From contig NC_134034.1 of NCBI RefSeq assembly GCF_964204645.1, positions 1,178,001 through 1,242,000 on the forward strand: 64,000 nt of DNA, given 5' to 3'. Shown piece after piece: positions 4,884 to 61,800 of this stretch. The DNA is from Tubulanus polymorphus. Taxonomy: Eukaryota; Animalia; Nemertea. The stretch's first letter is position 1. Every line of letters starts with the position of its first letter. Below the pieces are notes generated by a model, which searched no databases, had not been told where the DNA came from, and worked only from the letters and a program-made list of their open reading frames with translations. The position numbers and the translations under genes were made by a program.

Positions 4884-4914
4884 AGAACCAAACACATAGG
4901 CAGAGATACGAAGG

Positions 4915-7127: not shown

Positions 7128-7165
7128 TGCTGAAGACATGATAAATGAGTTCAGAATACAGTAAT

Positions 7166-9465: not shown

Positions 9466-10135
9466 ATATCTATGAACACTAATCTTAAATAACGATTGAG
9501 GCTTCATTTGAACCTCGAACTGCCGAATCGGGTTCTGTTTCTTATTTCATTTTTTAAAAAAACGCTGACTTGGCGAGCAGACGTTAACAGCCATGTGACT
9601 TCAGTTCACGTAAATCATCATAAGTGAATTAAACATGCCCGACGAACGAGTACAGATTAAAACTGAATATAACAGAATGCCAGCAGGCATTATGGATTAT
9701 ACTCAACAACGAGGCTTTTAATATTCAATCATTTAATCTATGGATTTGCGTAAATAACAAAGTGATAAACAGCTTTGACGTATTTTACCACTAAGTAGAG
9801 ATAATCCTACAATAAACGTTGTGTTAGACGTGAATATATTTCTACAAGTTTTAGACGAGTGACTGTTTAATTATTTTAAGAGAGCTAATTAGACATCTAC
9901 AGGTTATCATCACTATCAACTGATAGTCCTGATGCATCAATGTTTCGGTGTTGTGAAAAAATTTGTTTGCACATTTGTTACCGGGCACCTTTCAAACATT
10001 GAATACCAGTGGCCAACACAATGGCAGCCGCGAGGGCTCTTTCTCATGAGAGATAGTTTGGATCAGTCGACGTTGTAATCGATGACACACGCCATCTGGT
10101 GGTGAAACTATGAACACAGTAGAAACAGGGTAGTT

Positions 10136-22700: not shown

Positions 22701-24109
22701 TTGCCGTAGGAAATTTTCACCGAGCATCGAATCAGCGGTAACCCGACGAGCGTGAAGTTGGTGTTTGTTCCGTACATATAGGTGACGTTGTGGAGCAGAC
22801 GTAATGAATCGGTCGTCGTGGAAACAACGTCAATTTGACCTTGAACTGAACGAGAACTCACTGAAAATGAAAAATAAATATTTTAAGAGATTTTGGTTGA
22901 ATTACACAATTTGAGACTTAAGATAAGACCGGGCTAAACTAATTTCGGTCCAGTTTCACATTTCAGACCTAAAATAAGTCCAGGCTAAGCTAATTTGGGT
23001 CCAATTTTAAAGTTCAAACTTATGACCAGATTAGAATTTATGGAACTAATATCAAAATTTATGAAACCGGTCATTTTTAAATCTATGAACTGCCCGCCCC
23101 CTTCATAACAAATCTGAAATGCTCACCTTGATTTTCGACTATTAGTTCGTAATCGATTTTTCCGGGCAGTTGGAATATGCGTTTTAGGATCGGCTGCGTC
23201 GACATTACGGTTACATTTTCGATCGTCCATCGGTACAAAACATCCGTCCTTTTGATGAGAGATCCTAAAAATTTCATGAAAAATTTGACATCGATAAGTA
23301 CGCGGGTCTGTCAACCTATGTAAACTGCTATCAGCAACAAATTGAATTTTTCTCAAAAACATTTCATCGAAATATGAAAGAAAATGTTCAAATTAATCAG
23401 TTATCGACCGTAAGACCCTCAGTAACATCTTTCATATTTCTGTTCAAATTAATCAGTAATCGACAGTAAGACCCTCAGTAACATCTTTCATATTTCTGTT
23501 CAAATTAATCAGTAATCGACAGTAAGACCCTCAGTAACATCTTTCATATTTCTGTTCAAATTAATCAGTAATCAACAGTAAGACCCTCAGTAACATCTTT
23601 CATATTTCTGTTTTAAATTAATCAGTAATCAACAGTAAGACCCTCAGTAACATCTTTCATATTTCTGTTCAAATTAATCAGTAATCAACAGTAAGATCCT
23701 CAGTAACATCTTTCATATTTCTGTTCAAATTAATCAGTAATCAACAGTAAGATCCTCAGTAACATCTTTCATATTTCTGTTCAAATTAATCAGTAATCAA
23801 CAGTAAGACCTTCAGTAACATCTTTCATATTTCTGTTCAAATTTATCAGTAATCAACAGAAAGACCTTAATAGTAACAAAGTTCATATTTCTGTACGCAT
23901 CAAACCAATAAAATCAGTATTTCTCATCATCGAATAAGGTAGTCTCAAATACTGTATATCTGAAACAGTTGATAGTTCTGCATATGCAAAGTTCTGCATA
24001 TGCAAAGCTTTCTAAGAAAGAAATAAACTAAAGAAAGCCAACGACTCCTTTCAACATCAACGACAGCTAATGTGTGAGGGTATAAAATTTGGCCGGATCG
24101 AAATCATTT

Positions 24110-34794: not shown

Positions 34795-35018
34795 TACGAG
34801 TGAAATCCCACAATAAATGAATTTAGTGATAAAATGTTTATTTAAAACATATGAGAAATATTTCAGGCGGTTACTACCACCCTTCTTCAGTCTAAAAATG
34901 TCTTCATTCACATTTTTAGACTGAAGAAGGGTGGTAGTAACCGCCCGAAATATTTCTCATATGTTTTAAATAAACATTTTTTATCATTTAATTCATTTAT
35001 TGTGGGATTTTACTCGTA
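34795..35018. mobile_element. Inverted pair of Penelope-like LTR fragments carrying minimal hammerhead motifs
   Basis: ~225-bp near-perfect palindrome. Each arm has CTGAAGA-a-GGGTGGT-agta-ACCGCCY-GAAATATT followed by AATAAA. Flanking 17-bp direct repeat ATTCATTGTAAYTGATA at 34780-34796 and 35052-35068. Confidence 0.6.
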
Positions 35019-39534: not shown

Positions 39535-41756
39535 CCTGTCGACTGATTACAGCGCCACCTACCGATTACAAATCTGTAAACACACCGAGAAATAAATAGT
39601 TAATAATATTATATATCGGCCATCTTTACATTTTCATTGGTTAGGTCATATTTTAACTGGAGTAGGCTACAAACAACGGTACGTCTGCTAACCCCTTCTC
39701 CTAGTCCGCTACCCCTAGTTGGTTACCTAATCGTTGGTGGTAAGCTTTTATAATCGGATATGGTTTGTGAAAATGTCCGATCGCGAAACTAAATCCGAGA
39801 GATTTACTGACTACCCTTCTACCAGTCCTCCTCAACTAGCCCTCTCCCTACAATTTATCCCCTATCCGAACCATTCTGTCTATAGACTAGGCCTACAAAT
39901 TGTTTTGACCTCAATCCCCTGGGTCTATTTCAATTCCCTCACTAAAAAAATAGTCCGTGCTGTACTGCTAAGCCTCAGTCAGTTCTCGAGCGCCCCAGAT
40001 TTTTAGACATATATTGTTATATCATTAATGGCAGCGAGCAGCCTCACCCTGACCCCAGGGCATCACACACAAACACACACCTGCAAAAATATGTGTCGAA
40101 GCCGAAGAAAGAACATGAGTTATTTTTAGCCGACAAATTTTAGTAGACAAAAAAACAGTAAAACAGTAGCGGCCTAACTCAGACTGGATGATTGATATTA
40201 TGATTGAGTACACGTAACATCGAACCTTTTAAAACCTTTTAAAAATACGGAAACGAACTAGGGCTCACTTACAATAGAGAGAAAGGTCTGGAAAACCTGG
40301 TGAAATCCTAAACGGCAGTAGAAACTGGCTGCCTGCAGCGAATTTCTGTACTGGATACGTGTATGTAGCAGCGCAGTGCTTCACAATTGGTTCTTTTTCT
40401 ATACGATAGATGGCGGTACGGTGGATAAATTCGAATACAAATTTGTTTATTGCGTATAGTATGGAAGCCCTGAGACGACATTGCCAGTTGCGAGCACAGG
40501 GGCTCGTCACGATAGCTGGGGGTCCAAAATCGAAGATTTGACCCAGTATCCTAGGTACCACCTATAATAAAAGGTTTTTACGGGCCCAGTGTACGTAAAT
40601 GTGCAGTGTCGGAACGTATGGTTCCGTGCTATTGATATAATCGCATCTAAGCTTGTCGACGGACCAGTTGGTGGGATTATTTTGTCGGTTGAAAAAAAGA
40701 AGTAGATTGCGAGAATAAAACACAGGAGTTTCAGGTTTAACTCTTAAATCGATTTAATTTCTTCATTAAATCAGTTTATCCGTAGTTAAACGATAGGCCT
40801 CAATCCAGGATTTGCTATATCAAACTTAACTAAACGATGGACAAATCAATCATATTTATTCTCATACAACAATTATACAAAATGCCAGAAGTGCTCGAGG
40901 AATTATGATGTAAGCTCCTCAAACACGTGGACTTTCAAAAACAACTAGTCCAACCACCATAGGCGTGTAAACTATAAACAAGGGTTTATACGCCCATGGT
41001 CCAAACATAGACTAAAAAAAGTCTATGGCCCAACCATGGACTCAATTGTCCATGGCTCCCCGCACTAAAACCAGAGATAAACCTGGCCAAATACTCTGGA
41101 AAGCGTAGGATAAAGTAATCAATCTGATTTACATTTTTTACATCATTTTATTTTCACATATCATTAACATATCATCACATATATTTAACTTTTTATATAA
41201 CTTTTAGCTTATTTTCTCAAATTTTGATAGTACTATTACCCTATATGAAATTGTACTAACTTAAAACCATAAAAGTTACATGTAAGGTATTTAGAAGTCT
41301 TTATCTACAATACATTTCCACTACAGCTGATTTATACAATTTGCATCAATAGGAAAATGAGTAAAATTCACAAAGAATTGTAAACTTTGATCCATATAAG
41401 GGCCTTAATGAAAATAGTATTTTATGAACCATTGATAACTACCACAGTGAAAATACATTTAGTTGCAATACACGTAATTAAAGAAGAAAAGTTTTTATAT
41501 GAATGACAAACATGTATGTCGTTTTATTCTTACACAACAATTATACCTGCTTAATGAGTTATTTAAAAACATTTCAAAATAAAAACATTGAACCTACAAA
41601 TTCACTCACTCTGGAAAGCGTAAGGTTAACTAATTAATCTTAATTATTACAAGAAAACTAAAAACATTGCCAAATTTTCCTCATTTTTAAGAGATTTCTT
41701 CGAACATTATCAACTAGCTTATTTCACAAATGTTACATTTGACATTTGAAACAAAG

Positions 41757-42009
41757 CAGGGTCTGATCTAAGCACTAGTCCAATTGCCCGGGACAAGTAT
41801 ATTTTCATTAGGGCATGTAGGTTATCATAATCACTCGTCCACCGGGCTTGTGTAATTCTATGTCTCAAAGCTTTTATCCCACTTGATGCAAGGGATGATT
41901 GTGTCACAATTGGACTGCTCGTAGGGCAAGTTGATTTTTGAGGGGGCAAGTGATATTACATATGCTTGCCCCAAGGTCAAGTGGCATTTATTCCTTAGAT
42001 CAAACCCTG
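41757..42009. mobile_element. hAT-like MITE remnant
   Basis: CAGGGTCTGATCTAAG...CTTAGATCAAACCCTG inverted ends with internal GGGCAAGT/ACTTGCCC-type motifs; no intact TSD. Confidence 0.55.
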
Positions 42010-42889
42010 CAAATTATAAAGGTTTTTCTTTGTGACAATTTAAGATAAATCAAGTATTTTCATATAAATATGGTTTGATTGGCGAAGCTAGGTATTCGGT
42101 AACTTCTTAATTGTATTATTCAACTTGGATAGTAGATATAAATACAACTCAATATAAAGATCATAAATTCTTCTTGTCCAGAGATGACAGGCCCCACGCA
42201 GACGAGATCAAACCGATAATCAAAACAAAGCTAGGACAATTGACCAATTAGAACTGTATCCTCAAATTAGCCTATCAAGAAACTGCTCCTTATATTCTAT
42301 GCTCCTGCTATTTTAGACAAGGCCTTAATTAAATCAGTATTTTATGAACCACTGAAAAGCACCACAGTGGAATTGTTGCTATAAAACTTAACAACTGAAA
42401 AGTTTCGACACGAATGATGAAAATGTACATCGTTTTATTCACACAATAATAATTATTTAATCGATGAATCGTCATGCAAGTTCCTAATTTACAAACATGC
42501 AAACTGTGTTACAATAACAGTCTCCGACATAAAAGCATTAAAACTAGAGATGAGACATACAGATTCACTCAGGAAATCTTAGTATCAACTAATCATTATT
42601 TTCACTAGAAAACTAGAATTTTGTCCACTTTGCCTTGTCTTAAAGATGTCCAAACACCTTGACATTAAATACTAAGTATTCTGATGTTTTTTCTGGCAGC
42701 TTCGAAAACATCAACATAATTACATAAATAATATAATCGGGAACTAATCAATAACTTAAGTTTATAGCTGTTTTACATTCGTTCTAAAAAGTAAAATGTA
42801 TTAACCAGATTTTAGATAGTAAGTCTACCCCAGTATAACAATCAACAGTCACAGCAGTGATTGAGCGCGGCTAGTTGAAAGGACGGGTC

Positions 42890-43036
42890 GATCTTTCATC
42901 ACAGTTATTCAAAGCATTCTATCATATCAGTTATTTTTTTAAATGTTTTCGATTTAGTTAAGGTTTATGGTTATTTGTTTCGTTCATTACAGTAACTGAG
43001 TCCGATAGAATGCTTTGAATAACAACAGAAAAGATC
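42890..43036. mobile_element. Small inverted-repeat element
   Basis: GATCTTT..GTTATTCAAAGCATTCTATC / GATAGAATGCTTTGAATAAC..AAAGATC. Confidence 0.5.
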
Positions 43037-45068
43037 TCGGGTTTTCTCTATACTTAGGGAAGGTTGTTCGATAAATGAAGAACCTTGTTGATAAATATTT
43101 GAAAAAATGCCTTTTCATGTAAATAGAATATTAATTTGTTGTTTGTTTGTATTGTTGTTTATTATTTTTAATCTATTTTTTTATATTATCTATTTATTCA
43201 TGTGCTTGTATTTTGTATTATTTACTATTCATTATTTATTGGTTTTTTCTTATTTATTAATTTATGTGCTTGTATTTTGTATTATGTATCATTTAAACTC
43301 CTCTATCTACAATTGCAGGCATTTTTTCACTGTAAAGTTCATGGCCCATTCTAAAAAAAGCGCTACCGATTCACTGCCACTTCTTAATAATCATTATACA
43401 CCCGATTTGAAGCTAAGTGATTATTTACGAGAGCCATCTCGTGAAATGGACTTACCCAATACAATAAAAGAAGTTCAAACAGCTATAAACGATGTTAAAA
43501 CGTTCAAAATTAGTCCTAGCTATAACTTTATGCCTTGTTAATCCTAGCTTAACCTCTCAAATGTAAATAATGGTTTCCCTTCAAATAAAGCTTTTTTTTC
43601 AAATACGTAGCTATGATCATCAAACAGATTGATGGAGGCTTAAAGGTCGATGTGAAAATCGACGTCTACGATTCATTTGTCAAATTGGTAACATGGGCCT
43701 TTGAAAATATCAATGACATCAAATTAGTACATCTACAATTCAGCAAATACTTAATATTTGTACGTCAACACTGGTCTAACGCTATGTTCTATGTTTCCTA
43801 ACTACGTGATATCTATACAGACAAATAGCCACAGTTGACTATGTTTAACTATGGTAAGTTCGAAGATTAAACTCACAATATCAAGTTGAAACTATATCTC
43901 AGTTTAGGCGTTAACTCGAACAGACCTACGAGTCCAAACTAGGCGCTCAACACCTACATTTACCCCTAGTGACTAACCTAACTTGACTTATCTATCAACC
44001 AAGGATCGAAGACCAATATCTTGAATTAATGGGGCTTAGCTTTTATTAGACTCACACATTGCATAACAAATCATAAAATAGTTTCCTCGAAAACACTATA
44101 TCATCCATCAGACTGGTTTGAAAAAGGTGATAAGTAAAAAATCAATACTTTACTACGGAAGTCCGCTATTGTCTTCGCCGCTCCTGGATTTCAGTGTTTA
44201 TAAGATGCACTATTATCTATGCTGCTCCTAATAAGATACACTATTGTCTTTGCTGCTTTTAAAACATTGTTTATCCTGAATCAGTGTTTATGAATTAATC
44301 TATTAGTTTTGCTGCTCGAATCAGTGTTTATAAGATTCACTATTGTCTTTGCTGCTCCTGATAAAATGTTTCATAGAAATCAACCACCGATTGTCGAAGA
44401 ATCCATCGTTGAGTGATTAATCCATCGCTGGCTCCTCAACTTATCACCTGGGCTTCTGCAGTTTTCATCAGAAAATGGGTCAATCAGTAATCGTTGTGGG
44501 TGTCTTCTTCCGACGATTATTTCCGAGATGTAGTTTGGCTGAAACAAAGTAAAGAAAGCAAAACATTTCAGACAGATCTATCATAATTTACATGTCATTT
44601 CAAATAACAAGCAACAATGTTTTTCACAAAGCAAAATTCATTGACGTCAATTGCCGATTTAAACCCCAATAATCAATTGCAGTAGTAGGACTAGTTTATC
44701 ACTGTTTAAGACTAGTAAAGATAAAAGATCAGCCATGTGGACCGGTAAATAGATTTTGATGATAGTCACTTATTAAATGATATTCATATGAGGCCTGAAA
44801 TCTACATATACCGGTAATAAACATTGCTGGGTTCAGTTCTGGCCTTTTCTGTGCACCGTTCCAGTTTGTAGATTTTGGACGAGTAGTTGATCTCAAGCTG
44901 GGCTTTTTCTGATAGTTGAAACTTAGCTGCAATCATAAAAAGATGATGTCCTGTTATCACAAACCATTACATTTAGAATAATTTGAAATAATTCCACATA
45001 TATCAAGTTACCTTTCATGATTGCTGGGTTCGTTATCGGAGATGATCATCTAAGTTGGTTGACCTTTA

Positions 45069-45564
45069 GTTATACATTTCTATAATACATTTCTTTGGTA
45101 TTTTTTTTATGTAGTCCGAAAGTTTACAATAAGATAATTTCGTCTAAGTTATACATTTCTTTGGTATTTTTTTTTTCATGTAGTCCGAAAGTTTACAATA
45201 AGATAATTTTGTCTAAGTTATACATTTCTTTTATATTTTTTTCATGTAGTCCGAAAGTTTACAATAAGATAATTTCGTCTAAGTTATACATTTCTTTGGT
45301 ATTTTTTTTTTCATGTAGTCCGAAAGTTTACAATAAGATAATTTCGTCTAAGTTATACATTTCTTTGGTATTTTTTTTTTCATGTAGTCCGAAAGTTTAC
45401 AATAAGATAATTTCGTCTAAGTTATACATTTCTTAGGTATTTTTTTTTCATGTAGTCCGAAAGTTTACAATACGATAATTTCGTCTAAGTTATACATTTC
45501 TTTGGTATTTTTTTTTCATGTAGTCCAAAAGTTAATAATGAGATAATTTCGTCTAAGTTATACA
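45069..45564. repeat. 66-69-bp minisatellite x7
   Basis: CATGTAGTCCGAAAGTTTACAATAAGATAATTTCGTCTAAGTTATACATTTCTTTGGTAT(T)n. Confidence 0.95.
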
Positions 45565-48500
45565 ATTCACATATAAGATCAGCAATGTGGACCGGTAATT
45601 AGATTTTGATAATAGTCAATCATTAAAAAATATTTATATGAAATTCAACTCATATTGTAATTCATCTATATTCCAGATATCTAAGCAATGGTTGATTATT
45701 ATAGTTTAACAACATTTCTAACAAGACTAAAGCATCTATAATCATCTCCAGGAATACCAGAGTTATGCATAATCGATCTTATCAAATCGTTTTTGTACTG
45801 TTTTTCCCTTCTATCTTCAGAAATTCTTGATGTGTCTCTTTCTTGGGTGTTAAACACCCAGTGGCCAGTAGGCTTTTATTGAAACCCAGGCCCATCATAC
45901 GGTGTAAACCTGCTAGTAATATTGCCCTAAATACATTTCGATTGTCAGCTAAACCATATTCTGAACCGTATTATCAAATTAACTTCATCGTCAGTTAATA
46001 AACTGAAGAGATGTTTTCTACCCATAGATGTTGATATTTGGACCCAGTGAATGGTATTTTAATCCATTTCAGTAATTCTAAAACTATTGCTCCTAATATA
46101 TACAATGACTCGATAATGATGATAATACAACTGAAGAGCACACTGATCCTACACGCAACCTTGAATCATTCCCACACCTTGACAAATCCAGAATTCTGCA
46201 AAGCCTTAAAAGATTCAATAAATCCCTCGCACAAGACACACACCTTATTCTTTAGATATCAAATAATTACATTATACAGTTTTCTTATCAACCCCTACGG
46301 TTTAGGTTTGAGCACTTTTACCTTATATGAAGATGCTGAAATAATCTTCATCTTAGATACCTAATCAATCAATTAATTTCCTAGCTATAATCAAAACTGT
46401 TTATGACAATATTTCAACCAATATCAAATTATACAGTTGTCTATCAACCCCTATGGTTTGGATTTGAGCACTTTTACCTTATAGGAAAATGCTGAATTAA
46501 ACTTCATACCTAATCAATCAATTAATGTCCAAGCTATAATTAGAATTGTCTCTGACAATATTTTATACGGGGCTTGAAATTTCTTCACTAGAAGAATTTC
46601 CGATCCGGTACAAATTTAGATTGATCGCTATTTCAAACTGCTACTTTTGCATCACAGCTTTTGATAATGTTTGATGAATTCAGAATTCCCCAAAACCTAA
46701 CTGACTCAACTGATCCCAGACACATGTGGCCCAGTTAGACGCAGACGACATTGAGCGATACAGTCGTCTCATCCACTGCGCTATATTTTGAATAATTTTC
46801 ACTTTTATTCATTAAATTGAATTAATTTTAACTAATCTTCTAGATATCTAAGTGATCCATTAATTAGTAATCATACTAGCTATATCTTAATTGTCAGTTG
46901 AATAATATCAACATGGAGCCTGAAAATCTACATGAGTAGAATTTCAGATGTGGTGAATTCGTCCCTATTTCAATTCATCAGAATTTAAGATAAAAGTACA
47001 ATTCTAGTAGTAAATTAGAAACTCCCTTAAACGAATTGCTATATAACCTTTATTTCCCTTTTATAGTAGTACACTGTGTATAAGGACCGAAAGACCTTGT
47101 TATGACCGGACCTCCCAGGTGCGGTGCAAGACATGATGCTAGAAAATAGTTTGAAGGAGAGGGGTTAGTAAAAGAGAGCTATTAGCAAGAGGAATAAGAC
47201 CTAAGTTTAGGATATCCTGTCAGAATAAGGCTCTCCATCTGACATACACAGTGAAATTGAAAAATTCCCCCTCCAAATTCAGGAATGTATTTGTGCACAG
47301 ATTTGTTTTATCTCCCTTCGATCGGAAGTAAATCTGCGTGAAATGATTTTGGCAATATGTATCAAAACTAATACAGCTGTATGAAGACACTATAGGTTCA
47401 CTTAGATACCGATAAATAAATGCGCTCAGATACGCATGTATCAGCTACATTTTAAATGTCCATGGACCTGAATTAAATATAATTTGACATAAAATATTGA
47501 ATTTATCTTAATTGTAGATATCTAAGTAATAGGTTAATGAGTAATTCATCTTAGATTCTACGGTAATTGTCAGTTAAACAATATCTATTATGCGTCACTT
47601 GACACACAGTATGGCTTTTCGATATTATTTGAATCAGTTAGGTTTTGGTAAATTTTGGCAATATTGAAGAGCATGACCAGTCGCCATAAGTACGGCAGTT
47701 GGAGATGGAAATACTGATCAGTCAATGAGACTGATTCACATGTGCTCATACATATATCAGATATATTTAAATTTTCAGTTTAACGACATTTATATTATGG
47801 ACCAGTATTACATATTAATAGTTTTTGATCTTACATGAAATATTGAATTCATCTTAATTGTGGATATCTAAGCCATTCGTTAATGAGCAATTTGTCCTAG
47901 CTATATATATGATAATTGTCAGTTAAACAATAATCATAGCGCAAAACAAGGCACAGAGTGTGGCTTTCAAGAAATGATTTGAATCAATTAAAGCTTTGTT
48001 TTATTCTAGATTTGTCAAAGTGCTGAGACCTTATCACGGTTTCTAAAAGACCTGCAGTCCATAGTTTTCCCCATATAAATATATATTACACCAGATCTCG
48101 ATAGAGCCCTAGACACTATTTTATACATCTTTCCGCGGAGAAGTTCATTAATGCAATGGGTAAAGCAGCAAAATATACACTGTAAAGTGCCTGAATGCTT
48201 ATAAATGTATCAATATATTATTTTATATAAATAGTCCGAAAATTTATTGTAGTTTTTCTCGGTTATATGTTGATACCTTCATCCTCCAAGTTGTTTGTCC
48301 CGCGTGTTGACTAGGTAACGATGTTGTTGGAACGTCCAAGGGTGCCATCGGACTCAGTCCCGGAGTCGGATTCTGGATGTTGGTATCACCAGACTTCCCA
48401 CCATCGGAATTTGTTCTGACTAGTGAAATGACAAGAGGAAGAGAGCATATTATATATTAAGTCAAAATGTTTGTCAGACAGAGCCTGACCACTGTGGTTT

Positions 48501-49195
48501 GAGAAAGCTTTTATTATCTCATAACCATCCCTATCATAAGTAGTATTAACTATTATTATGCCACAAATTTATGCCAGCTCCATTCGTGTCTGAGTACAAG
48601 TACAACCAAACCATGTACCTCTTACCCACACAATAAGCCAGGTTTTTTTTTTGAACGGAATGTCTGAGCTTTTTTGCCTAAGAGCTAGTAAGAAATCAAC
48701 ACCAACAGGCTTTTTTTCTGAGAATCAAACACCTGTATTTTGGAATTAGTAAAAATTAATCCCTGATATACGACTATTGCCCCAAGTGGGCTAAATAAAA
48801 TCAAGCTGAAATTAAAAAGTACATAATCATTAATTAACAAGATGATGAGATGAGGGAAAAGATGAATGGCCAGGATGAGGGGTCTGAATTAGAAATCGAA
48901 GCTACAGAGTTAACGATGAATTTGAAGTACACAAAAGATGTTCGAGATTACAGAGTTCACGAATACAATATTGACGTTATCATCCGCTGCGACAAGAAAA
49001 ATTGGGAAAGATTTTGATGGAAGGGGAAAGAACCTTGGATGAAAAATCAAATTTCCAGAGTTTCACGGCTTAATTCGAAGTACAACCATATAGACGCTGG
49101 TAATACATAGTTTTAACGGCTTTACATCATATTTGATCTAACCTGAGAGAAAGAAGTCAGCACAGAACTTCTGGCTGATAACAGCAAAGTCCGGT

Positions 49196-49817
49196 TCTCA
49201 GGGTTCCAACTGGCAGCGGCAGAGTCGGAGTTCTCTAACGTGGCCTCGTCCCAGCTAGTGGCGGGGTGCTGACAACACGGGTGTTACCACGGAGGACCCG
49301 CAATCAGAGTAAGATGGGAAGCGACAAACAACTTCGGCTTCAGGGGATATCCGATCTTCAAGCATCAACACCAAAAGACAACCGGCACCCAGAAGAGAGA
49401 GAAAAACTGGGTGAACGGGGAGCCCAATCAGCAAGATGCCAATGGGTAGCCTTAGGCGAAGAAACCAGCCGATTCAGACTAGAATGGACCAAACTGGGGA
49501 CCCAATTGAGAATTGAGCACACCACCTAAGACAACCGGCACCCAGATGACAGAGAAAAACTGGGTGAACGGGGAGCCCAATCGGCAAGATGCCAATGGGT
49601 AGCCTTAGGCGATGAACCAGCCGATTCAGACTAGAATGGACCAACTGGGGACCTAAAGATCCAACAGCCCCCTCAGTCGAAGATTGCTACCGCCCCCATC
49701 TTATTCTGATCGCAGGTACCCCGTAGTAACATCCGCATCACCAGCACTCCGCCACTAGCTGGATCGAGGCCACATTAGAGAACTCCGACTCCGCCGCTGC
49801 CAGTTGAAACCCTGAGA
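49196..49817 (-). ncRNA. Candidate long hairpin RNA (about 160-bp imperfect stem enclosing a duplicated ~127-bp module)
   Basis: 49196-49358 is an inverted copy of 49656-49817, with mismatches mostly G-U-compatible on the minus strand. All three minus-strand frames stop within ~75 nt of the candidate acceptor at 49812. No expression data. Confidence 0.45.
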
Positions 49818-52599
49818 TTGAGAGGGCGGGGGTGGGGGTGAGGGACGAATGAAATGAAAGAAAAAAAAATGAAAAAACAAAAATAATATAGAAAAATAAC
49901 GAAAAAAATAAGATATAAAATATACCACACATTCATACGACACATATAAACTCCATTCACTCCTCTTGCACACACCGGGCACACGACTCCGTCCACTCCG
50001 CTTGCACACACCGCGCACACAACTCCATCCACCGCACACATAACTCCATCCACTGCCACCGGCGCCACGCCACCACTCCGAAAAACACCGCGCCACAAAA
50101 CCGCCAGGATCGCCAGGAAACACAGCAAAAGCTGAAGAGCTCGAGAAAACGCCATCTGATCGTGTCAAAGACTAGCACTCGATTGAACGATTGTGGAGAA
50201 ATTCCGCAGTCTACAGTATCAAATGCAAACATAAATGTAGATATTTTATTGAACGAAATTGATTTTCAGTCCACGTCAGTTGAAAACCCGTTTTGATCGA
50301 TGTTTTAATGTTTATTTTAAATAAAAATTAGATTTACGACCTAGGGCTATTGACTAATATCTAATTGTGAGGGTTAGATAATAGGATCGCGGATGAATTT
50401 ACTGCTCGCATGCCACAGCTCCGTCAAATCTCAATCGTCTAGTGCTGCCCCTAAATACTGTGGCGAACACATAAACTAATCGATTAATATACTCTACTCG
50501 TATTTGTACATAAGGCCTACAGTTTACTTATCTTGCTTAATTTACGCCGTTCATGTCTTGTGCCGGTATCCTAAGACTAAGGATCATATTGGATCCATTT
50601 TCAGCGGTAGAGCTAGATAATTAAATGATAATTATCCGAACAGTAGATTGTTCTATTTTTTAAAACTTCCTCCACGTCAAAGTTAATAGTTAAAAATTCA
50701 CAATACAAATTATGTTCAAATCCAGATTCCACAAACAACAACTCGTTGGCCCACTGAAAGATAGCAGTGATACAATCATCGGGTATAAATGTTAGAAAGA
50801 ATTAGGTCTCAGGGCCTTAATTGTACGTCACCGGTAATGGAAAAAGTAAGGCAGCAGGAAGGTAGGCCTACCCTAGTCAGTAACCTGACTGTGGTTTAGT
50901 TTCACGATCGGATATTTTCACAAACCACATGAGCCCATCCGACTATAAAAAAGCTTACCACCAACGAGTAGGTAACTAACTAGGCCTACCCATGTAGGCT
51001 TAAATTATCCAACTACAAAAGCCTTGACGAGAAAAGAACGAATTAGCAACATAAACAAAATCGAAAAGGAAAATATCGAAAGTGCATGATATCAAATTAA
51101 CTTAATTATGGCTGCTCAAATATAACCACCACTAAAACCGATGCCTGAGAGGGACTTGAAGCTCACACCACGAGGACAGATCTAGGCAAATATCCGAATT
51201 TCAATTGCTAGACTTTAGGGTATGGTCGAATGAGAGAGTAACATCTCAGGGAATGTCTAGAAGTTCAAATGACACTGCGCGTAGATTGTTCACGTCAGGA
51301 GTCATCAAACTCAAACAGTCCCATAAAAATGAGCACCTGAAGTCTACATCAGGGGCCATTTTATCAGAATCTTGGGAAGAAATCCGTTGAAGAAGCGATG
51401 GATAAAGGCAAATAGATCTGATTAGAAAAAAAAAACATGTTTTGAATATTAGTTTCCATTATATTGAAAGTATTCCTAGTTACAAAATTTCTCATTAAAA
51501 AACCAAAACCGACCCTGAAAGATTTCATTCTGCAAGGTTGGTCGCAATTTAGGTGGTAAATTATTAGAGATTTGAATGTGGAAGATATGAATCACATTAT
51601 GAATCACATCACGCCGTATGTCGTAATACATTGACGCGATTGTGTGTTCAGATTTCACATGGTCACAGTCGAATGATCGTGGGTGGGTACTGAGGGAATT
51701 TACTATACGCCAGGTCAATTGAGTCTATTCACGCTCGTAACACAAACTAAGTCCCGTTCTAATATACACGTACGGTAAGCCCTATGTTTTTGGGCCCTGG
51801 TTGTTAATTATTAAGATTTTTGATGACGCGGTCTTTCGTCTTAGACTGTTGTTTGGTCATTGTTCGGAAGGTTGACCAAATTTCATCTGGGTTTGCATGC
51901 AGACGTTTCGAATTTGTCTACCCAGGCTTTCTTAGCGTTTTGAATGCTTAATTGGGCCTCAGCAGAAGGCAAGGAGATTGTCGATGGAGTTTCTTTGTTT
52001 TTGTATCTCTCGCTGCATAAAGTAAAGATAGCTCTCTTGTACGTATCCTGGTTAGCCCAGCATGGATGTTTCAGTCTGTATTTTTATACATAGTAAAACC
52101 TTTTGTGTCAGGTCCCTTTCGTATTCCAATTTTGATTCGGCCGTGCGAATGATATCAACATCTCTGAAAAACCGCTGTTAAATGGATTTATGAGTTTATC
52201 ATGGACGTTAGAGTCTGAATACCTGTCCTTGTTACCGGTTCTCTTAAACGGTTTTTTGTTTGTGGAACGACGGCTAGGTACTAATGAGACTACCATGGAC
52301 GGAACAAACAAAATGCACACATAAGACACTGAGATGAACAAACAAATAGTAGCATTAGTATGTAGATGTGACTTGCTAGTTATAAAGATTTTTCTGGTGG
52401 TAATGAAAATCATCTGGTCAGTCATTGGAATATCAGTGGAGGAACATTGAAATCGCACCCTGTTTTAGTTTAGATTGTAGGATAGTGTCAACGAGGACAA
52501 TTCATACTCAGGCCCTACAATATAACCTATATAGAAACTTGAAATAACACTTGAAAACATCCAATTATCATTTTCGCAAGGAAAGACTTTGCAAAATGA

Positions 52600-52861
52600 T
52601 TTACTAAAATTGTAGAATGATGGAATTAAGATTGCGTGCGTCCTTTAACGGACTTGAGCTCTGACTGGCCACCGTGTCGTGCTGCCATCTGTACTCGTTT
52701 CAGATAAATCTACACTTCGCGTTAGAAATATAGATTTGTGGAGCCGAAATTTTGACTTCCGGCAGTTAAGAAATTGCGTAAATAAAAAGATAAACGACAA
52801 ATGTGCAATTAACCAGGCCGTAATTATCGAGTTAATCAGCCTGATTAATTTTCAGTAATTA
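52600..52861 (+). promoter_or_regulatory. Probable UBR3 core promoter / 5' UTR
   Basis: CpG-richer segment immediately upstream of the ATG with an ETS-type ACTTCCGG at ~52755. Confidence 0.4.
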
Positions 52862-55800
52862 ATGATGGCTGGCGGGCAGCACGACCATGCCGCTAATGCG
52901 CTAATGAAGCGAGGCAAGCGACCGCTGGCCGTTTACATGAAAGCTCAATGTTTGAGAATCGTCGGAAAAAACAACTGTCAACAGCTTCACGATTTACTGG
53001 ATCACCTGCTCGACCCTAGAGAACCCTTCGATTACGAGCGTATCGACTGGTGTCGTTGGTTGATTGCAGGGGGCGCCACGTTCGACGATTTTGCTAAAAC
53101 TGGTGAGTCTCAGTCAAGTCGCTGACACAATTCATGTCCAAAAATTTTTATTGCACCTCTACTACAAGGCATGGGCATGGGTCTGGTTTTTGAGTGGGTT
53201 TAAATTAAAACTTACCCAACCCTCCTTAGAAGGATAGAGAAAATAGATTCCCTTCCACAGACGAAAGTCTCGTAGCGTCCTGCTAGGCCTATTTGATTCC
53301 ATAGTTTGAAATATAAATCATCTAATTTATGGTTTTCTACGGGTGGCGCCACTTACTGGAAGCCAGGAAAAGTTGTAAAAAAGCTACTTTAGTGGGGAAA
53401 ATTAGTTTAGATTTGTTTAGATTTAGAATATGCGTAGAGTCAAACTGTTTCTATCTGTAAATAGTATTGTTTCTATCTATATATTTGACGTGTGTTAATT
53501 GATTGGATTCTTACCAGATCAAGTCAGGAAAAGTAACGCGCATGTTAGGGAATAAATAGTCAGGGTATTTTCTTAGAAATAGTTGAGGAAATTAGTCGGG
53601 ATTGCTTTCGATCGCTCGTAAAATCTAAACTGTTTCCGTTTATGTTTTACGTTTTATCTGTTTATGATTTAGTGCGTATGTACGATAACGCTGTAACGTG
53701 CGGTCTCGTTTGGACGGCTAATTTCGTCGCGTATCGCTGTCGAACGTGCGGCATCTCGCCGTGTATGTCGCTGTGCGCCGAGTGTTTCCAGGCCAGCGAT
53801 CATCAGGGTCACGATTTCAACATGTTCCGCAGTCAGGCAGGGGGCGCTTGCGACTGCGGCGATGTCAGCGTCATGAACCCAGACGGGTGAGTGTTAATGA
53901 TTTTAAGCATTTCGGTTGTTTAACCCTTTCAGTGCATCACACCGCAGTGCGGTGTATGAATCGGTGATGGATTTTGCTAGTACACTGCGGTGTATTGATT
54001 TAATTAGTTTTTAGTTGTTATCTCTATATAAAGATGGCAGCACCTGTCAAACATAGTGAAATACTAGTAACTAACGATACACTGCACTGCGGTGTAGACG
54101 CACTATAGTGGTATTCCCGTTATTCAACACACTAGGGCAGAATTTTCCCAAATTTTCACATTTTTTCCAGCACTATAGGGTAGTCAGCACTGAAAGGGTT
54201 AAATAATCTATAGGCTTTGTCTTGATTTTAAATGCTAATTAAAGTAAAATCTTGTGTGAAGAATGTTCTTCAACTACAGACTAGTCTTCTGATTTAAAAC
54301 AACCCAACTCTGGGGCCAGTTGCACAGTCGTGACTTAAGTCCAAAAGTGGTCTTTTATCTTAAGACTGGTCTTAAGTTGTTAGATTGGCTATAGAACAAA
54401 GTTGGTCTTAAGTCTAAGCCATGACTATGGAACTGGGCCCTGGACTGGGGGTAGATGTAGTTCTTACTTCAGCCGACCGTGTTCCCAGTTTTGCAGGATA
54501 ATCGCTAAACTCAATTGCCAAATTTTTCATTCAGATTTTGTCCTCGCCACGGTCCGAACCGGACTAGTCAGCAGCATTCCGTTCCTCCGGACTTGCTCGT
54601 CATCGCGGAAGAAATGATGCCGCGGTTGCTATGGCGATTCATCCAGCATCTACGCGGAAATTCGAAACCCGGTAAGTTCCCTCCGTTATTCTGAAATATT
54701 CATGAGTAACACTAAAACTAGGCCGGCAGTTACGACTGTGGATAAGACCTGGCTCTAAATTTAAGCCCTGGTTTAGCTATTTTTGGTCTAGTTATTCTGT
54801 TGAGACTTAAGTTTAGACCAAGCTAAGCTTAATTTGATAGAGTGTTCACAAGAAAAACCCAGTTTCACTGTTGAGAGTAAACATTAGACCGGGCTAAGCT
54901 AATTTCAGTCCAGTTCCACTGTTAAGAGTAAAGATAAGTCCGGGCTAAGCTAATTTTAGTCCAGTTCCACTGTTAAGAGTAAAGATAAGTCCGGGCTAAG
55001 CTAATTTCAGTCCAGTTCCACTATTAAGAGTAAAGATAAGACCGGGCTAAGCTAATTTCAGTCCAGTTCCATTGTTAAGAGTAAAGATAAGTCCGGGCTA
55101 AGCTAATTTCGGTCCAGATCCACAGTTAAGAGTAAAGAAAAGTCCGGGCTAAGCTAATTTTGGTGCAGGTCCACAGTTGAGAGTTACGATAAGACCGGTC
55201 TAACTGATTGTTGATGATAATGTTTTTGATTACAGAGATGTTGGATACGTTCCTGGTTGCTATGGAAGATGCTGATCAGTATCTGACGTTTCTACACACT
55301 CTCAGTGATATGGGCGCCGCTATGCGACATGTTTTCACATCAGCCATGACCAACACGCAAGTTTACAAAAATTTCAACGAAAGTGAGTCATAGCCAAGAT
55401 GTCTGCCTTCATAAATCCCCCTATGACATCATCAACTCGTCAACTATTGATCTATAAATCACTTCTATAAAAAATGTCTGCCTCCATAAATCCCCCTATT
55501 GATCGAATCACTGAAAAAGGAAATATTAATCACTTTTAGGTAATTTGATGATGTCATAGGGGGATTTATTGTGGGGGTTTATTTTTGAGAAATTGTGAAA
55601 ACTTTATTATGAATGCGTCTGTGTTGTATGAGTAGGTCGTCGAGGGCAGACGTCTACCCACAATGCATCACCTAGTTCGTCAACGGCAGACGTTGATTTC
55701 GACGAAGAATTACAGATAAATTACGAGACGGCGATCGAATCGTTGAGGTTTCCTCCGATGCCCGAAGAATTACCCGGTAGATATTTCCCGGTTAAAGATT

Positions 55801-58800: not shown

Positions 58801-61800
58801 ATTAAGTTAAGAAATTTCTCTGAGGGAATTTTGTGTAATCACATGGAAAAATCCGGGACCAGGGCCCAGTTTCACAAAAAAGGGAACTCAAATTTTTGGT
58901 GTAATTGCCATTGGTTACTTCGTGTTTTCAATGACGACAACAGTTCGAACTTAACCGAGGCTTCCAATTTTTTGTGAAACTGGGCCCAGTTACAATCAAT
59001 CTGGGATGTTTGGCAACTTTCATTTACTCAAGATCTTTACATCTGTAGCTGAACCACGGATATTGCGTATATTCTCGACGTTTCATTTTCTCTCCGTATT
59101 TTCAGCCGAATAGTCGTCAGATATCGTTTCATTTACCGCTGCATCGTTATCTGGCGGCGTTTCTCAGTCAGGCCGTCTGCGTGCTCGACATCCCGTTATC
59201 GGACGTGCTGCCATCTAGTGACCAATTGAAACAACTACTCATTCATCCTTTACAAATACAGGTAGCGAACGAAAACAAACTTTTGATTCGCTTCGTTTTT
59301 AAAAGCTGACTATGAAATTTAAAGAAATTTAAATTCTTTTTCACGTGTTTCTTTTTCCTGCCTACAGGTGGCGTTTTACGAGATATTCTGCGGTCTATGG
59401 GTGCGAAACGGGTTACAAATCAAAGGACAAGCGATGACCTACATACAGTGTCATTTCTGTAACAGTCTCGTAGACGCCGACATCTTCCTCTTACAGGTAC
59501 GATCCCCCTATGACATCATCAAATTGTTCACTTGTGATTCGATCTATAGACACTTGTAGAAATGATGTCTGCCTCCACAAATCCACCTATGACATCATCA
59601 AAGTCTAATTACTGGTGATTTGATTTATAGACACATCCAGGAAATATGGCTTTCACAAAACTCCCCCTGTGTCATCATCCAAATACCTACTGGTGATATA
59701 GACCCTTCTAGAAAAGGTGTCTGCCTCCATAAATCCACCTATGACATCATCAAATCACTTACGGGTGATATAGACCCTTCTGGAAAAGGTATCTGCCTCC
59801 ATAAATCCACCTATGATATCATCAAAGTCTAATTACTTACTATTGATTTGATTTATTTCTAAGAAAAGATGTCAGCCTTCATATAATCCCCCTATGACAT
59901 CACTTTATCATCTGCTGCTGGTGTATTACAGGTGTGTTTTTATTTATAGGTTTGCGCTGCGTATTTAGATCCCGAGTTCGTTTTGAAATCAATATTTGAA
60001 AGATTCCACGTATTTGATTGGGTAACGTTGAGTCCGATTCCCACGTTGTCGCCACGGTTACAGCACGAGGATGCATTGTTGGAAGGCTGTCTGACATTCC
60101 TCGCCACACTGCTCGGTTTCCGTAATCATTGGGGTACGTCTCTTAAAAACTGGAACTAGGTCTAGAACCCACAATTGTGGAACTGGGCCAAGAACCCACA
60201 ACTGTGGAACTGGGCCAAGAACCCACAACTGTGGAACTAGGTCTAGAACCCACAACTGTGGAACTGGGCCAAGAACCCACAACTGTGGAACTAGGTCTAG
60301 AACCCACAACTGTGGATCTGGGTCTAAAACCCACAACTGTGGAACTGGGTCTAGAACCCACAATTGTGGAACTGGGCCAAGAACCCACAACTGTGGAACT
60401 GGGCCAAGAACCCACAACTGTGGAACTAGGTCTAGAACCCACAACTGTGGAACTGGGCCAAGAACCCACAACTGTGGAACTAGGTCTAGAACCCACAACT
60501 GTGGAACTGGGTCTAGAACCCACAACTGTGGAACTGGGTCTAAAACCCACAACTGTGGAACTGGGCCCAGAACCCACAACTGTGGAACTGGGTCTAGAAC
60601 CCACAACTGTGGAACTGGGCCCAGAACCTACAACTGTGGGATGAAATTTTCAACAACTGTGGAACTGGGTTTATTATTTACAACTGTTTAAACTTTGATT
60701 CCAAATTTATAACTGTGAAATTGTGTGTAGAACCCACAACTGCGGAACTGGGTTCCTAATTGACAACTGGGAAATGTGGTCCTGTAGTACACACAACTGT
60801 GGAACTGGGACTGTAATTCGTAAGGTTCTTCTGTTTCATATATGTTTGCTGTGTTAATTGTAAACAGGTATTGGGGAAGAAGAATTAACACGTATCGAAA
60901 TGGTTACTCTGTTATGCGTTAGTGATCGCACGCATTCACAATTGATGGATCTGATGCCAGAGAAATGCGGCTTGAGCGGACAAACGAAACAGTTTGAACC
61001 CATTCTCAGACAGGTACGTCTATCGGTGACACCTAGTGTTGCTCTTTTCAACTACTAGTTACGCACAGCCATCTATTGTCATTCGAATCAACTAATTCAA
61101 CATCCTCATACAAATACATCTACGAATATTTATTACAATCCAACCATTTCCATGGTATATGGAGGAAAAACAGTATTTACAATTAATTACATAAACAGCA
61201 ATAAAAGCCTTTAAACCTCAATAAACTGGGCTCACACTTATATGCGTAAAAAACTATTAACTAGTCACCAAGTGTCCTTCTAATCAACTAGTCACAAAGA
61301 GCCACCTAGTGTCACAAACATCAACTATTTCTTTGGCGATGTGGATATCGAATTATTGTATTTGCCGTTACAGATTGGTGACTATAAGGCTCCTAATTTC
61401 GAGGCTGGTGGTGGTACTATGCAACAGGGCATGTATGTGCCTAAAGGTAAATAACCAATCTACGTCTGCTCATGAAATACATTACATGTATTATCGATTT
61501 TCCTTTGAAATTTTCAACGAGAAACATTTTTAACTGATTAACTGCTGTTTATTTGAAAAGTTTACGCCCGTTGTTATTTGTAGAATTAGTTTGGAATGAA
61601 GATTTCGACCCGATGTATGTTTCTTTGAGAGCCGTTCATCGCAGGGACTTTCAGAGCGCCATGGATCGATATACTACGGCGTAAGAATCCGGCACACTGG
61701 CGACACCTGGTGGATCCTCACTTACCTCAAGTGGAATCTTCTATTGCCGCAGTAGTTGATATCCTACTGCGCGCTAGCGACACCTGGTGGATCCTCACTT

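What the first reader, a model, noticed from the sequence alone, without database searches (positions are those of the whole stretch)
49196..49817. Long non-coding hairpin with strand-specific G-U bias: candidate hairpin-RNA gene or ADAR-edited retro-copy
Seen: 49196-49358 and 49656-49817 are inverted copies. In my hand alignment of the ungapped 123 bp (49196-49318), 13 differences are A/G or C/T in the direction that gives G-U wobble pairs in a minus-strand RNA, 3 go the other way and 2 are transversions. One block (ACAACAC vs GTGATGC) has five changes that all keep pairing. The 500-bp DNA foldback at 18187-18686 is an internal control and shows mixed changes with many transversions. The stem lies almost entirely in a candidate minus-strand exon (pyrimidine tract + CTCAG acceptor, exon 49811-49143, donor CAG/GTTAGA) with stops in all frames. 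Known: G-U-rich spliced hairpins characterise Drosophila hpRNA endo-siRNA loci, and A-to-I hyper-editing followed by reverse transcription leaves the same footprint. Inference: this sequence has been shaped as RNA rather than as a DNA transposon.
Basis: partly seen in the sequence, partly recalled or inferred. Interest (0 to 1): 0.8.

Follow-up and report, generated by a model that had tools for sequence, protein, structure and literature searches.

The report
Wobble-biased RNA hairpin inside DNA transposon
The 622-base fold-back and its one-strand G-U bias are real, but it is not a unique gene: it is a conserved internal module of a roughly 14-kb non-coding DNA transposon with at least 20 copies, whose stem seems to have been kept as a single-strand (probably RNA) structure, although no RNA from it could be examined.

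Summary
Observation confirmed. The arms 49196-49318 and 49695-49817 are 85% complementary, and the pairing extends with gaps to 49358/49656. Mismatches are 13 minus-strand G-U : 3 plus-strand : 2 transversions. The minus-strand RNA folds 64 kcal/mol better than the plus strand.

It is not a single locus. At least 20 full and 3-4 partial copies (87-97% identical) lie on 12 contigs, always with the same flanks. The host is a non-coding repeat of about 14.4-14.9 kb. It has 28-nt terminal inverted repeats (36 hits in the genome; the window's left one is at 40460). The one copy with both ends held has a 6-bp target duplication. So the host is a non-autonomous DNA transposon, not a retro-copy.

Family-level test with a strand-neutral pairing register:
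- consensus: 18 minus : 4 plus wobbles
- changes shared by two or more copies: 19 : 7
- private changes: 18 : 23
- shared flank changes: 60 : 67
- most wobble-making changes are C>T, so this is not an ADAR footprint

The two central 152-nt units are the best-conserved part.

Most likely this is a transposon-borne hairpin transcript under structural constraint. Small-RNA output is not shown. This scan has reported similar wobble-biased modules (about 775 nt, 100-300 copies) elsewhere in this genome. This is a smaller family that showed no match to them in my searches.

The parts
49196..49817 (-). Hairpin module (622 nt): a long imperfect stem closed by two tandem 152-nt units. The favoured folding strand is the minus strand.
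   Evidence: All 20 full copies fold 39-72 kcal/mol better as the minus strand.
49656..49817 (-). 5' arm of the minus-strand hairpin
   Evidence: 167 registered arm positions, with consensus 137 Watson-Crick, 18 G-U (minus), 4 A-C, 8 transversion mismatches.
49196..49358 (-). 3' arm of the minus-strand hairpin
49359..49510 (-). Central unit 1 (152 nt). It has a branched local fold and is part of the best-conserved stretch of the repeat.
   Evidence: Direct repeats with spacing 151-153. Minus-strand fold -46.9 vs plus -37.3 kcal/mol. Private changes 0.119 per column vs 0.233 in the stem. The covariance model finds the unit only in the same ~23 loci.
49511..49655 (-). Central unit 2 (about 145-152 nt)
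   Evidence: (minus -56.3, z -4.7; plus -41.4)
40460..52095 (.). This window's copy of the host element: a non-coding TIR transposon, complete at the left end. Homology to other copies stops near 52095, with no right TIR found in the window.
   Evidence: Homology blocks to other copies. The left terminal motif occurs once in the window. Complete copies elsewhere are 14,355 and 14,849 bp.
40460..40487 (+). Left terminal inverted repeat of the host element (28 nt, TATGGAAGCCCTGAGACGACATTGCCAG)
   Evidence: a single hit in the window, none in 100 shuffles. (36 hits in the genome, 17 forward and 19 reverse, reversed-pattern control 0; inverted pairs bracket hairpin copies).
49818..49925 (-). Pyrimidine-rich tract ending in CAG at the 5' base of the hairpin (splice-acceptor-like; function not shown)
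   Evidence: Sequence. Conserved with indels in the 20 copies.
49135..49145 (-). CAG/GTTAGA donor-like site 53 nt 3' of the hairpin (function not shown)
   Evidence: Sequence. Conserved in most copies.
47555..48277 (.). 723-bp stretch private to the window copy (an insertion relative to the other copies)
   Evidence: Other copies join 47554 to 48278 directly.
50872..50983 (.). Nested high-copy short repeat of about 110 bp, absent from several other copies of the host element
   Evidence: 1556 first-look candidates, many hits at 91-95% limited to query 773-883. Gaps at this place in other copies.

Best explanation
The hairpin is a fixed internal module of a family of non-autonomous, non-coding DNA transposons. 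The elements are about 14-15 kb long and have 28-nt terminal inverted repeats. One copy has a 6-bp target duplication. The family has at least 20 hairpin-bearing copies.

Shown:
- the multi-copy, transposon-borne nature of the module
- the absence of coding capacity in the parts held
- a stem that tolerates G-U only on the minus strand
- the bias is present in the family consensus and in changes inherited by several copies, but not in private changes or in the flanks
- two central 152-nt units that are the most conserved sequence of the element

Inferred:
- The element is transcribed across the module on the minus strand. The roughly 170-bp stem is maintained because the folded RNA matters to lineages that go on to spread.
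- G-U pairs are favoured because they keep the RNA helix while making the DNA a less perfect palindrome.
- The most likely use of such a helix is as a long dsRNA substrate (Dicer or another dsRNA-binding factor) that acts on the family itself. This last step is a guess; nothing here shows small RNAs.
For: Copy number and fixed context:
- 20 full-length copies at 87-97% identity on contigs C1-C12, plus partial copies.
- Flanks are homologous in every copy.

Host element:
- The 28-nt TIR has 36 genomic hits and 0 for the reversed control.
- Inverted pairs bracket the hairpins at C7:1333965-1348319 and C5:22718241-22733089.
- The right TIR lies 2.3-2.7 kb from the hairpin in 9 copies.
- There are short TIR pairs of 1.0-3.6 kb without the hairpin.
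- ATAATT directly abuts both TIRs of the C5 copy.
- No Pfam domain in any ORF of the element. No Rfam or tRNA hit.

Strand-specific constraint:
- Window arms 18:4. Family consensus 18:4.
- Shared changes 19:7 (p=0.029), with 7 transversions. Private changes 18:23, with 26 transversions. Fisher p=0.025.
- The trend persists for low-frequency shared variants (16:6 at five or fewer copies).
- Shared flank substitutions show no strand asymmetry (60:67).
- Three pairs show double compensatory changes.
- Every one of the 20 copies folds 39-72 kcal/mol better as the minus strand.
- The loop units are also more stable on the minus strand and have half the private-change density of the stem.

Background:
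- G:U substitution keeps hpRNA function while disrupting the DNA inverted repeat in engineered constructs (PMC9263138).
- The genome has a Dicer-type locus and several adenosine-deaminase loci.
Against: - No RNA evidence of any kind. Two searches for predicted products in public assemblies were blank.
- The selection signal is moderate. With a strand-neutral register the shared-change bias is 19:7 (p about 0.03). My first count on the RNAalifold structure (17:3) was inflated because that structure was chosen on the minus strand.
- Some high-frequency 'shared' changes could be mis-polarised reversions of ancestral G-U pairs.
- A cut-and-paste DNA transposon has no RNA intermediate, so the benefit of an RNA structure to the element is unexplained.
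- Short TIR-bounded derivatives without the hairpin exist, so the module is not needed for the ends to be recognised.
Confidence: 0.55

Rival explanations
1. An ordinary DNA-level inverted duplication (fold-back) that happened once inside the ancestor of the transposon and has been carried along passively. On this reading the G-U bias is an accident of history or of a past mutational asymmetry, and nothing acts at the RNA level.
For: Most of the bias (18:4) was already present in the family ancestor and is inherited by all copies, so the copies are not independent. The later signal is only 19:7, p about 0.03, and about 0.05-0.06 when restricted to rarer variants. Private changes are neutral with respect to pairing (18:23, 26 transversions). 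The host is a DNA transposon.
Against: The flanks show no strand asymmetry in shared changes (60:67). Transversions and A-C changes are depleted among inherited stem changes relative to private ones. Unpaired stem-region columns carry four times more shared variation than paired ones. The loop is the most conserved part of a 14-kb non-coding element. The consensus and shared sites together give 37:11.
Confidence: 0.22
2. The copies are host-used hairpin-RNA (endo-siRNA) loci of the Drosophila hpRNA kind. They would be transcribed and spliced, diced into 21-22-nt siRNAs, and would silence a target gene or the autonomous partner of this transposon (as Mu killer does for MuDR in maize).
For: A long near-perfect minus-strand helix. 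Acceptor-like and donor-like signals bracket it. One Dicer-type locus is present. The structure has been kept through the family's diversification.
Against: The arms match nothing in the genome except the family's own copies (44 first-look candidates, all family). There is no coding ancestry in the arms. There are 20 or more dispersed copies inside a transposon instead of one or a few host loci. Individual copies decay neutrally in the stem. No small-RNA data were available.
Confidence: 0.1
3. The hairpin acts as single-stranded or cruciform DNA, or as a pair of internal transposase-binding sites, in the transposition or replication of the element. G-T pairs would be tolerated in a strand-specific DNA hairpin.
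For: The outermost 14-22 nt of each arm resemble the element's own TIR tip. GGAA(G)CCCTGAGA and TGCCAGTTG co-occur only at the TIR and at the two hairpin bases in the 64-kb window. The host moves as DNA.
Against: The local alignment of TIR and hairpin is no better than shuffles (score 22 vs mean 20.4, maximum 31), and the two motifs are in swapped order. DDE-type cut-and-paste has no known strand-specific single-strand stage. A cruciform has G-T on one strand and A-C on the other at the same site, so it gives no strand bias. TIR-bounded derivatives lack the hairpin.
Confidence: 0.08
4. An ADAR hyper-edited transcript that was reverse-transcribed and re-inserted, leaving A-to-G changes on the sense strand of the stem.
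For: G-U bias on one strand. Adenosine-deaminase-domain loci exist in the genome.
Against: Among shared wobble-making changes 14 are C>T and 5 are A>G. Private changes show no excess toward minus-strand wobble (18:23). The host has TIRs and a 6-bp duplication, with no poly(A) or retroposition-type end.
Confidence: 0.02
5. The 622-bp stretch is itself a small inverted-repeat transposon (MITE or foldback element) that landed in the ancestor of the large element.
For: Long terminal arms and an internal tandem repeat are typical of foldback-type elements. Unit number varies between copies; there is a 3-unit copy at C3:7317820-7318225.
Against: There is no target-site duplication at the hairpin ends in any of 20 copies, and the hairpin never occurs away from the same flanks. 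A DNA-only element would not show the strand bias.
Confidence: 0.03

Closest known systems
Wobble-biased hairpin modules (about 775-800 nt, 100-300 copies) reported earlier by this scan in the same genome (s1-492787, s1-516393, s1-535350, s1-516436, s1-487638)
   Same: A long fold-back with a one-strand G-U bias. It sits inside a large dispersed non-coding repeat, with the stem kept as structure and the centre as sequence. No RNA could be shown.
   Different: This family is smaller (about 23 loci) and shorter (622 nt, two 152-nt central units). Neither a BLAST-type search nor a covariance-model search with its parts found the larger family. Here the host repeat is shown to end in 28-nt TIRs with a 6-bp flanking duplication, i.e. 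it is a DNA transposon. I could not compare the sequences of the earlier findings.
Drosophila hpRNA (endo-siRNA) loci
   Same: A long, imperfect, non-coding inverted repeat predicted to fold as one transcript, with possible splice signals around it.
   Different: hpRNA loci are one or a few host loci whose arms derive from their target genes and whose siRNAs are documented. Here there are 20 or more transposon-borne copies, no outside target and no small-RNA data.
Mu killer (maize) and other transposon-derived inverted duplications that make hairpin RNA
   Same: A hairpin-forming inverted repeat tied to a DNA transposon family. A dsRNA acting on the family itself is the natural reading.
   Different: Mu killer is a single rearranged derivative that silences its family (from general knowledge). 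Here the hairpin is an integral, conserved part of nearly all large copies, and its arms are not a copy of any transposase gene.
MITE-derived hairpins and miRNA precursors
   Same: Transposon sequence that folds into a stem-loop and can feed small-RNA pathways.
   Different: In MITEs the arms are the element's own terminal repeats, flanked by a target duplication. Here the hairpin is internal, 8.7-12 kb and 2.3-2.7 kb from the element's ends, and has no duplication of its own.
Engineered G:U hairpin-RNA transgenes (PMC9263138)
   Same: C-to-T changes in one arm keep the RNA helix through G:U pairs while breaking the DNA inverted repeat. This offers a rationale for a natural G-U bias.
   Different: That system is designed, in plants, and linked to DNA methylation and self-silencing. 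Whether any such pressure exists in this animal is unknown.

Membership tests
TIR (class II) DNA transposon, non-autonomous (for the host element) | Terminal inverted repeats at both ends | tested here: met
   The 28-nt motif occurs in inverted pairs bracketing hairpin copies on C7 and C5. There are 36 hits genome-wide and none for the control. The sequences at both ends of the C5 copy were read.
TIR (class II) DNA transposon, non-autonomous (for the host element) | Target-site duplication directly outside the repeats | tested here: met
   ATAATT abuts both TIRs of the C5 copy. This is one copy only. No other copy has both ends in the sequence I hold.
TIR (class II) DNA transposon, non-autonomous (for the host element) | Dispersed copies and internally deleted derivatives sharing the ends | tested here: met
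   Copies lie on 12 contigs in both orientations. TIR pairs 1.0-3.6 kb apart occur at four other places (coordinates only).
TIR (class II) DNA transposon, non-autonomous (for the host element) | A transposase, in this element or in an autonomous partner with the same ends | tested here: not met
   No ORF over 135 aa and no Pfam hit in the element. An autonomous partner was not found or sought further. Superfamily not assigned.
hpRNA / endo-siRNA locus | A single transcript spanning both arms | not testable with these tools
   No RNA-seq was available. Two look-ups for products in public assemblies were blank.
hpRNA / endo-siRNA locus | Dicer-dependent 21-22-nt duplex reads from both arms | not testable with these tools
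   No small-RNA data. One Dicer_dimer locus is present and no RdRP was found.
hpRNA / endo-siRNA locus | Arms homologous to a target gene | tested here: not met
   The arm query hits only the family's own copies. There is no protein-domain ancestry.
MITE / foldback element (for the 622-bp stretch itself) | Own target-site duplication and occurrence independent of one fixed context | tested here: not met
   All 20 copies share the same flanks, and no duplication is seen at the ends.
ADAR-edited retro-copy | Clustered A>G changes on the sense strand dominating the arm differences | tested here: not met
   Shared wobble-making changes are 14 C>T and 5 A>G. Private changes are 18:23.
ADAR-edited retro-copy | Retroposition hallmarks (poly(A) or a LINE-type tail, variable 5' truncation) | tested here: not met
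   The ends are TIRs. An apparent sharp 'left end' and ragged 'right end' seen at first turned out to be internal junctions.
Known RNA families (Rfam 15) | A match at or near a family's gathering score | tested here: not met
   Only a chance-level mir-1322 hit (23 bits vs a gathering score of 70) in 42000-53000. No tRNA.

The most novel reading that the evidence does not exclude
A DNA transposon family carries its own long hairpin-RNA gene and keeps it under purifying selection. The hairpin has a stem of about 170 bp that tolerates only sense-strand G-U pairs, plus two conserved 152-nt units. The element would use this dsRNA to tune, saturate or divert the host's dsRNA and small-RNA machinery. 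Together with the larger hairpin-bearing repeat families that this scan reported in the same genome, this would make transposon-encoded structured dsRNA a recurrent strategy in this animal.
Probability: 0.2. Interest if true: 0.75.

Novelty: new variant of a known kind. Interest (0 to 1): 0.45.

Why it matters
Transposon-derived hairpins are usually treated as accidents that the host exploits for silencing. Here the hairpin is a standard, conserved part of a non-coding DNA transposon. Its pairing appears to have been kept on one strand while the family spread.

If transcripts and small RNAs confirm this, it would be a case of a mobile element maintaining a structured RNA for its own ends. That would be in a phylum (ribbon worms, according to earlier notes) where small-RNA biology is almost unstudied.

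It is also a practical warning. One-strand G-U bias in a single inverted repeat is not enough to call an hpRNA gene, because the bias can be inherited by dozens of repeat copies.

Tried and rejected
1. RNAalifold-based pair counting gave 17:3 for shared changes. I rejected it as the headline figure because the structure had been chosen on the minus strand. A strand-neutral arm register gives 19:7.

2. LINE-like reading. A sharp boundary at L036:508, a 758-bp terminal block shared with a high-copy family, and ragged opposite ends suggested retroposition with 5' truncation. I dropped this when the 28-nt motif was found at both ends of complete copies, about 520 bp beyond that boundary. The '508' junction is internal, at least in the C5 and C7 copies.

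3. Transcript evidence through predicted proteins of public assemblies. The 87-aa and 137-aa ORFs gave nothing. The third search was not spent.

4. Rfam, ARAGORN and Pfam on 21 ORFs of the window copy and other copies of the element gave nothing relevant. The Pfam hits (PKD, GPCR, galactosyltransferase) belong to neighbouring host genes.

5. A covariance model of the 152-nt unit found only the same loci. Only 150 of about 75,000 first-look candidates were scored, so this is weak evidence of absence.

6. Similarity of the hairpin bases to the TIR is not better than shuffles by local alignment. It is kept only as a note.

7. Transcription-coupled mutation bias as the cause is not supported by the flank spectra.

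I did not try to read flanks through pattern matches, since that would go around the limit.

9. The organism name (Tubulanus polymorphus) comes from earlier notes in this scan and was not verified. My own evidence shows only an animal genome of 268 Mb.

Full report
**1. The observation**

The inverted repeat is real. The arms 49196-49318 and 49695-49817 are 123 nt long, 85% complementary and 376 nt apart. A gapped alignment continues the pairing to 49358/49656. Between the arms lie two tandem units of about 152 nt (spacing 151-153, 96-100% identical over the matched blocks).

| Region | G-U on minus | G-U on plus | Transversions | Binomial p |
|---|---|---|---|---|
| Ungapped 123 nt | 13 | 3 | 2 | 0.021 |
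| Full 163-nt arms | 18 | 4 | 8 | 0.004 |

Folded as RNA, the minus strand reaches -387.6 kcal/mol and the plus strand -323.3 kcal/mol.

**2. It is not a single locus**

A search of the window's own genome (268 Mb, 77 contigs) with the 622 nt found 20 full-length copies at 87-97% identity on contigs C1-C12, in both orientations. It also found three or four partial or rearranged copies. A search with one arm alone gave 44 first-look candidates, all from those same loci.

In all 20 copies the 40 nt on either side are the same sequence too. Homology to the window runs for kilobases on both sides. So the hairpin never occurs on its own and has no target duplication of its own. This excludes a free MITE.

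**3. What the host repeat is**

At first the host looked like a repeat of 13 kb or more. It seemed to have a sharp left boundary (L036:508), a 758-bp block shared at 82-85% identity with a very abundant family (1,500-2,300 first-look candidates), and ragged right ends. That pattern suggested retroposition. The suggestion did not hold.

The right ends of three copies share a precise terminus, TATGGAAGCCCTGAGACGACA followed by TTGCCAG repeats. The same motif, in the opposite orientation, sits at window 40460. It also sits at the far end of the C5 copy.

A genome-wide pattern search for the 28-nt version (up to 3 mismatches) gave 36 hits, 17 forward and 19 reverse. The reversed-pattern control gave none.
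- Inverted pairs bracket the hairpin copies at C7:1333965-1348319 (14,355 bp) and C5:22718241-22733089 (14,849 bp).
- In nine copies the right-hand motif lies 2.3-2.7 kb from the hairpin.
- Four other inverted pairs are only 1.0-3.6 kb apart and lack the hairpin, as expected of internally deleted derivatives.
- For the C5 copy I hold both junctions, and ATAATT directly abuts both terminal repeats.

No ORF in the element exceeds about 135 aa, and none has a Pfam match. Rfam and ARAGORN find nothing.

The host is therefore best described as a non-autonomous, non-coding TIR DNA transposon. Its superfamily is unassigned, and the target duplication has been seen once.

The window copy runs from 40460 to about 52095. 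It lacks a right terminal repeat, carries a private 723-bp insertion at 47555-48277, and carries a nested high-copy repeat of about 110 bp at 50872-50983.

**4. Is the strand bias more than inheritance?**

Most of the window's G-U pairs are shared by all copies, so the 20 copies are not 20 observations. I therefore separated three classes of site on the alignment of 20 copies.

A first count on the RNAalifold consensus gave 17:3 for shared changes. That structure had been chosen on the minus strand and leaves A-C positions unpaired. So I repeated the count on a strand-neutral register of the two arms (167 positions).

| Class | G-U on minus | A-C (G-U on plus) | Transversions | p |
|---|---|---|---|---|
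| Family consensus (137 Watson-Crick pairs) | 18 | 4 | 8 | - |
| Changes shared by two or more copies | 19 | 7 | 7 | 0.029 |
| Private changes | 18 | 23 | 26 | - |

- Shared versus private gives Fisher p=0.025.
- Restricting to rarer shared variants keeps the ratio: 16:6 at five or fewer copies and 14:5 at three or fewer, with p about 0.05-0.06.
- In 800 nt of flank on each side, read on the same strand, shared substitutions that would make minus-strand wobbles number 60 against 67 for the opposite kind. So a transcription-coupled or other mutational asymmetry is not seen.
- Paired stem columns carry 0.10 shared changes per column. Unpaired columns inside the stem region carry 0.44.
- Three pairs show double, pair-keeping changes, one of them with both single-step intermediates present.
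- All 20 copies fold 39-72 kcal/mol better as the minus strand.

Taken together (37:11 over independent sites), this favours constraint on a single-stranded form of the minus strand in the lineages that gave rise to new copies. Individual copies then decay neutrally in the stem. The signal is moderate, not overwhelming.

**5. The centre**

The two 152-nt units are the most conserved part of the module. They have 0.119 private changes per column against 0.233 in the stem and more in the flanks.

They also fold better on the minus strand: -46.9 and -56.3 kcal/mol, against -37.3 and -41.4. One copy on C3 has three units.

A covariance model of the unit found it only at the same loci. Only 150 of about 75,000 candidates were scored, so absence elsewhere is not shown.

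**6. What it is not**

- **Not an ADAR-edited retro-copy.** 14 of the 19 shared wobble-making changes are C>T, private changes show no bias, and the host has TIRs and no retroposition-type tail.
- **Not a gene-derived hpRNA.** The arms match nothing outside the family and have no coding ancestry.
- **Splicing is undecided.** The acceptor-like pyrimidine tract with CAG and the CAG/GTTAGA donor-like site are present and mostly conserved, but in a uniformly conserved neighbourhood.
- **The enzymes exist.** The genome has one detectable Dicer-type locus and several adenosine-deaminase-domain loci. No eukaryotic RdRP hit was found, but that control was uninformative.

**7. How it most likely works**

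Shown:
- the module is transposon-borne and multi-copy
- G-U is tolerated on one strand only, among inherited changes
- the central units are conserved

Inferred:
- The element is transcribed on the minus strand across the module.
- The helix matters for the success of propagating lineages.
- G-U pairs are favoured because they keep the RNA helix while weakening the DNA palindrome. That rationale has been demonstrated for engineered hairpin transgenes (PMC9263138).

The use of the helix is unknown. I consider a dsRNA substrate acting on the family itself the most likely.

The main rival is a passive DNA fold-back whose bias is historical.

A minor rival is a DNA-level role. This is hinted at by the resemblance of the outer 14-22 nt of each arm to the element's own terminal repeat. 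That resemblance is not significant by local alignment.

**8. Relation to earlier findings of this scan**

Several follow-ups in this genome describe wobble-biased hairpin modules of about 775-800 nt, in 100-300 copies, inside a 'gene-like' non-coding repeat of about 10 kb. So the phenomenon has been found before on other DNA.

The present family is distinct in my searches: about 23 loci and no cross-hits. What this report adds is that its host is bounded by terminal inverted repeats with a flanking duplication. I could not compare the sequences directly.

**9. Limits**

Only 42 loci are held, and only one copy has both ends.
- There are no RNA data.
- The organism name is taken from earlier notes and was not verified.

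Noticed in passing
window 49196-49217 and 49796-49817, compared with 40460-40490: The outermost 14-22 nt of each hairpin arm resemble the host element's own terminal repeat. GGAA(G)CCCTGAGA and TGCCAGTTG co-occur in the 64-kb window only at the TIR and at the two hairpin bases, but in swapped order. A local alignment is no better than shuffles.
   Followed up: partly
L036:508-1265 (C2:898307-899064); window 40580-41138 is a diverged relative: A 758-bp block near the left end of the element is shared at 82-85% identity with a very abundant family (1,500-2,300 first-look candidates, many hits covering exactly this block). It is probably an independent high-copy element or a shared module.
   Followed up: partly
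window 50872-50983: A short repeat of about 110 bp with about 1,556 first-look candidates genome-wide at 91-95% identity. It is nested in this copy and absent from several others (SINE- or MITE-like).
   Followed up: no
L024:1501-2750 (C5:22731840-22733089): The left terminal region of the C5 copy contains an extra partial copy of the hairpin's left flank plus the first 220 nt of the hairpin, placed between the terminal repeat and the main body. This is an internal rearrangement of that copy or of its subfamily.
   Followed up: partly
G000:C3:7317663-7318387: A hairpin copy with three central units instead of two (725 bp). Unit number is therefore variable within the family.
   Followed up: partly
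window 18187-18686: A separate 500-bp fold-back (185-nt arms, 92% complementary, 130-nt spacer). Its arm differences are mixed and transversion-rich (4:2:8).
   Followed up: partly
window 34831-34980: A near-perfect palindrome: 71-nt arms, 99% complementary, 8-nt spacer.
   Followed up: no
window 20938-21627 and 24993-26417 (minus strand): Open reading frames with PKD domains (E 1e-13 to 2e-22). They are probably exons of a host gene in an otherwise repeat-dense window.
   Followed up: no
window 1283-9500, 23275-23950, 31106-31620, 45085-45568, 54808-55215, 60043-60744: Many minisatellite arrays (periods 23, 27, 39, 43, 46, 51, 55-57, 69, 71 nt). A 79-nt repeat family is also scattered in both orientations across the window (11.4-16.3 kb, 19.6-28 kb, 39 kb, 55-60 kb).
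   Followed up: no
L041:3155-3334: A palindromic stretch that gives sub-threshold hits to two plant miRNA-precursor models on both strands (50 and 40 bits, far below the gathering scores). It is most likely another small inverted-repeat element.
   Followed up: no
L033:1987-3072, L033:4778-5965, L042:2188-3138: Single-exon rhodopsin-type GPCR ORFs and a galactosyltransferase ORF lie a few kb from other copies of the element, which shows insertion near genes.
   Followed up: no
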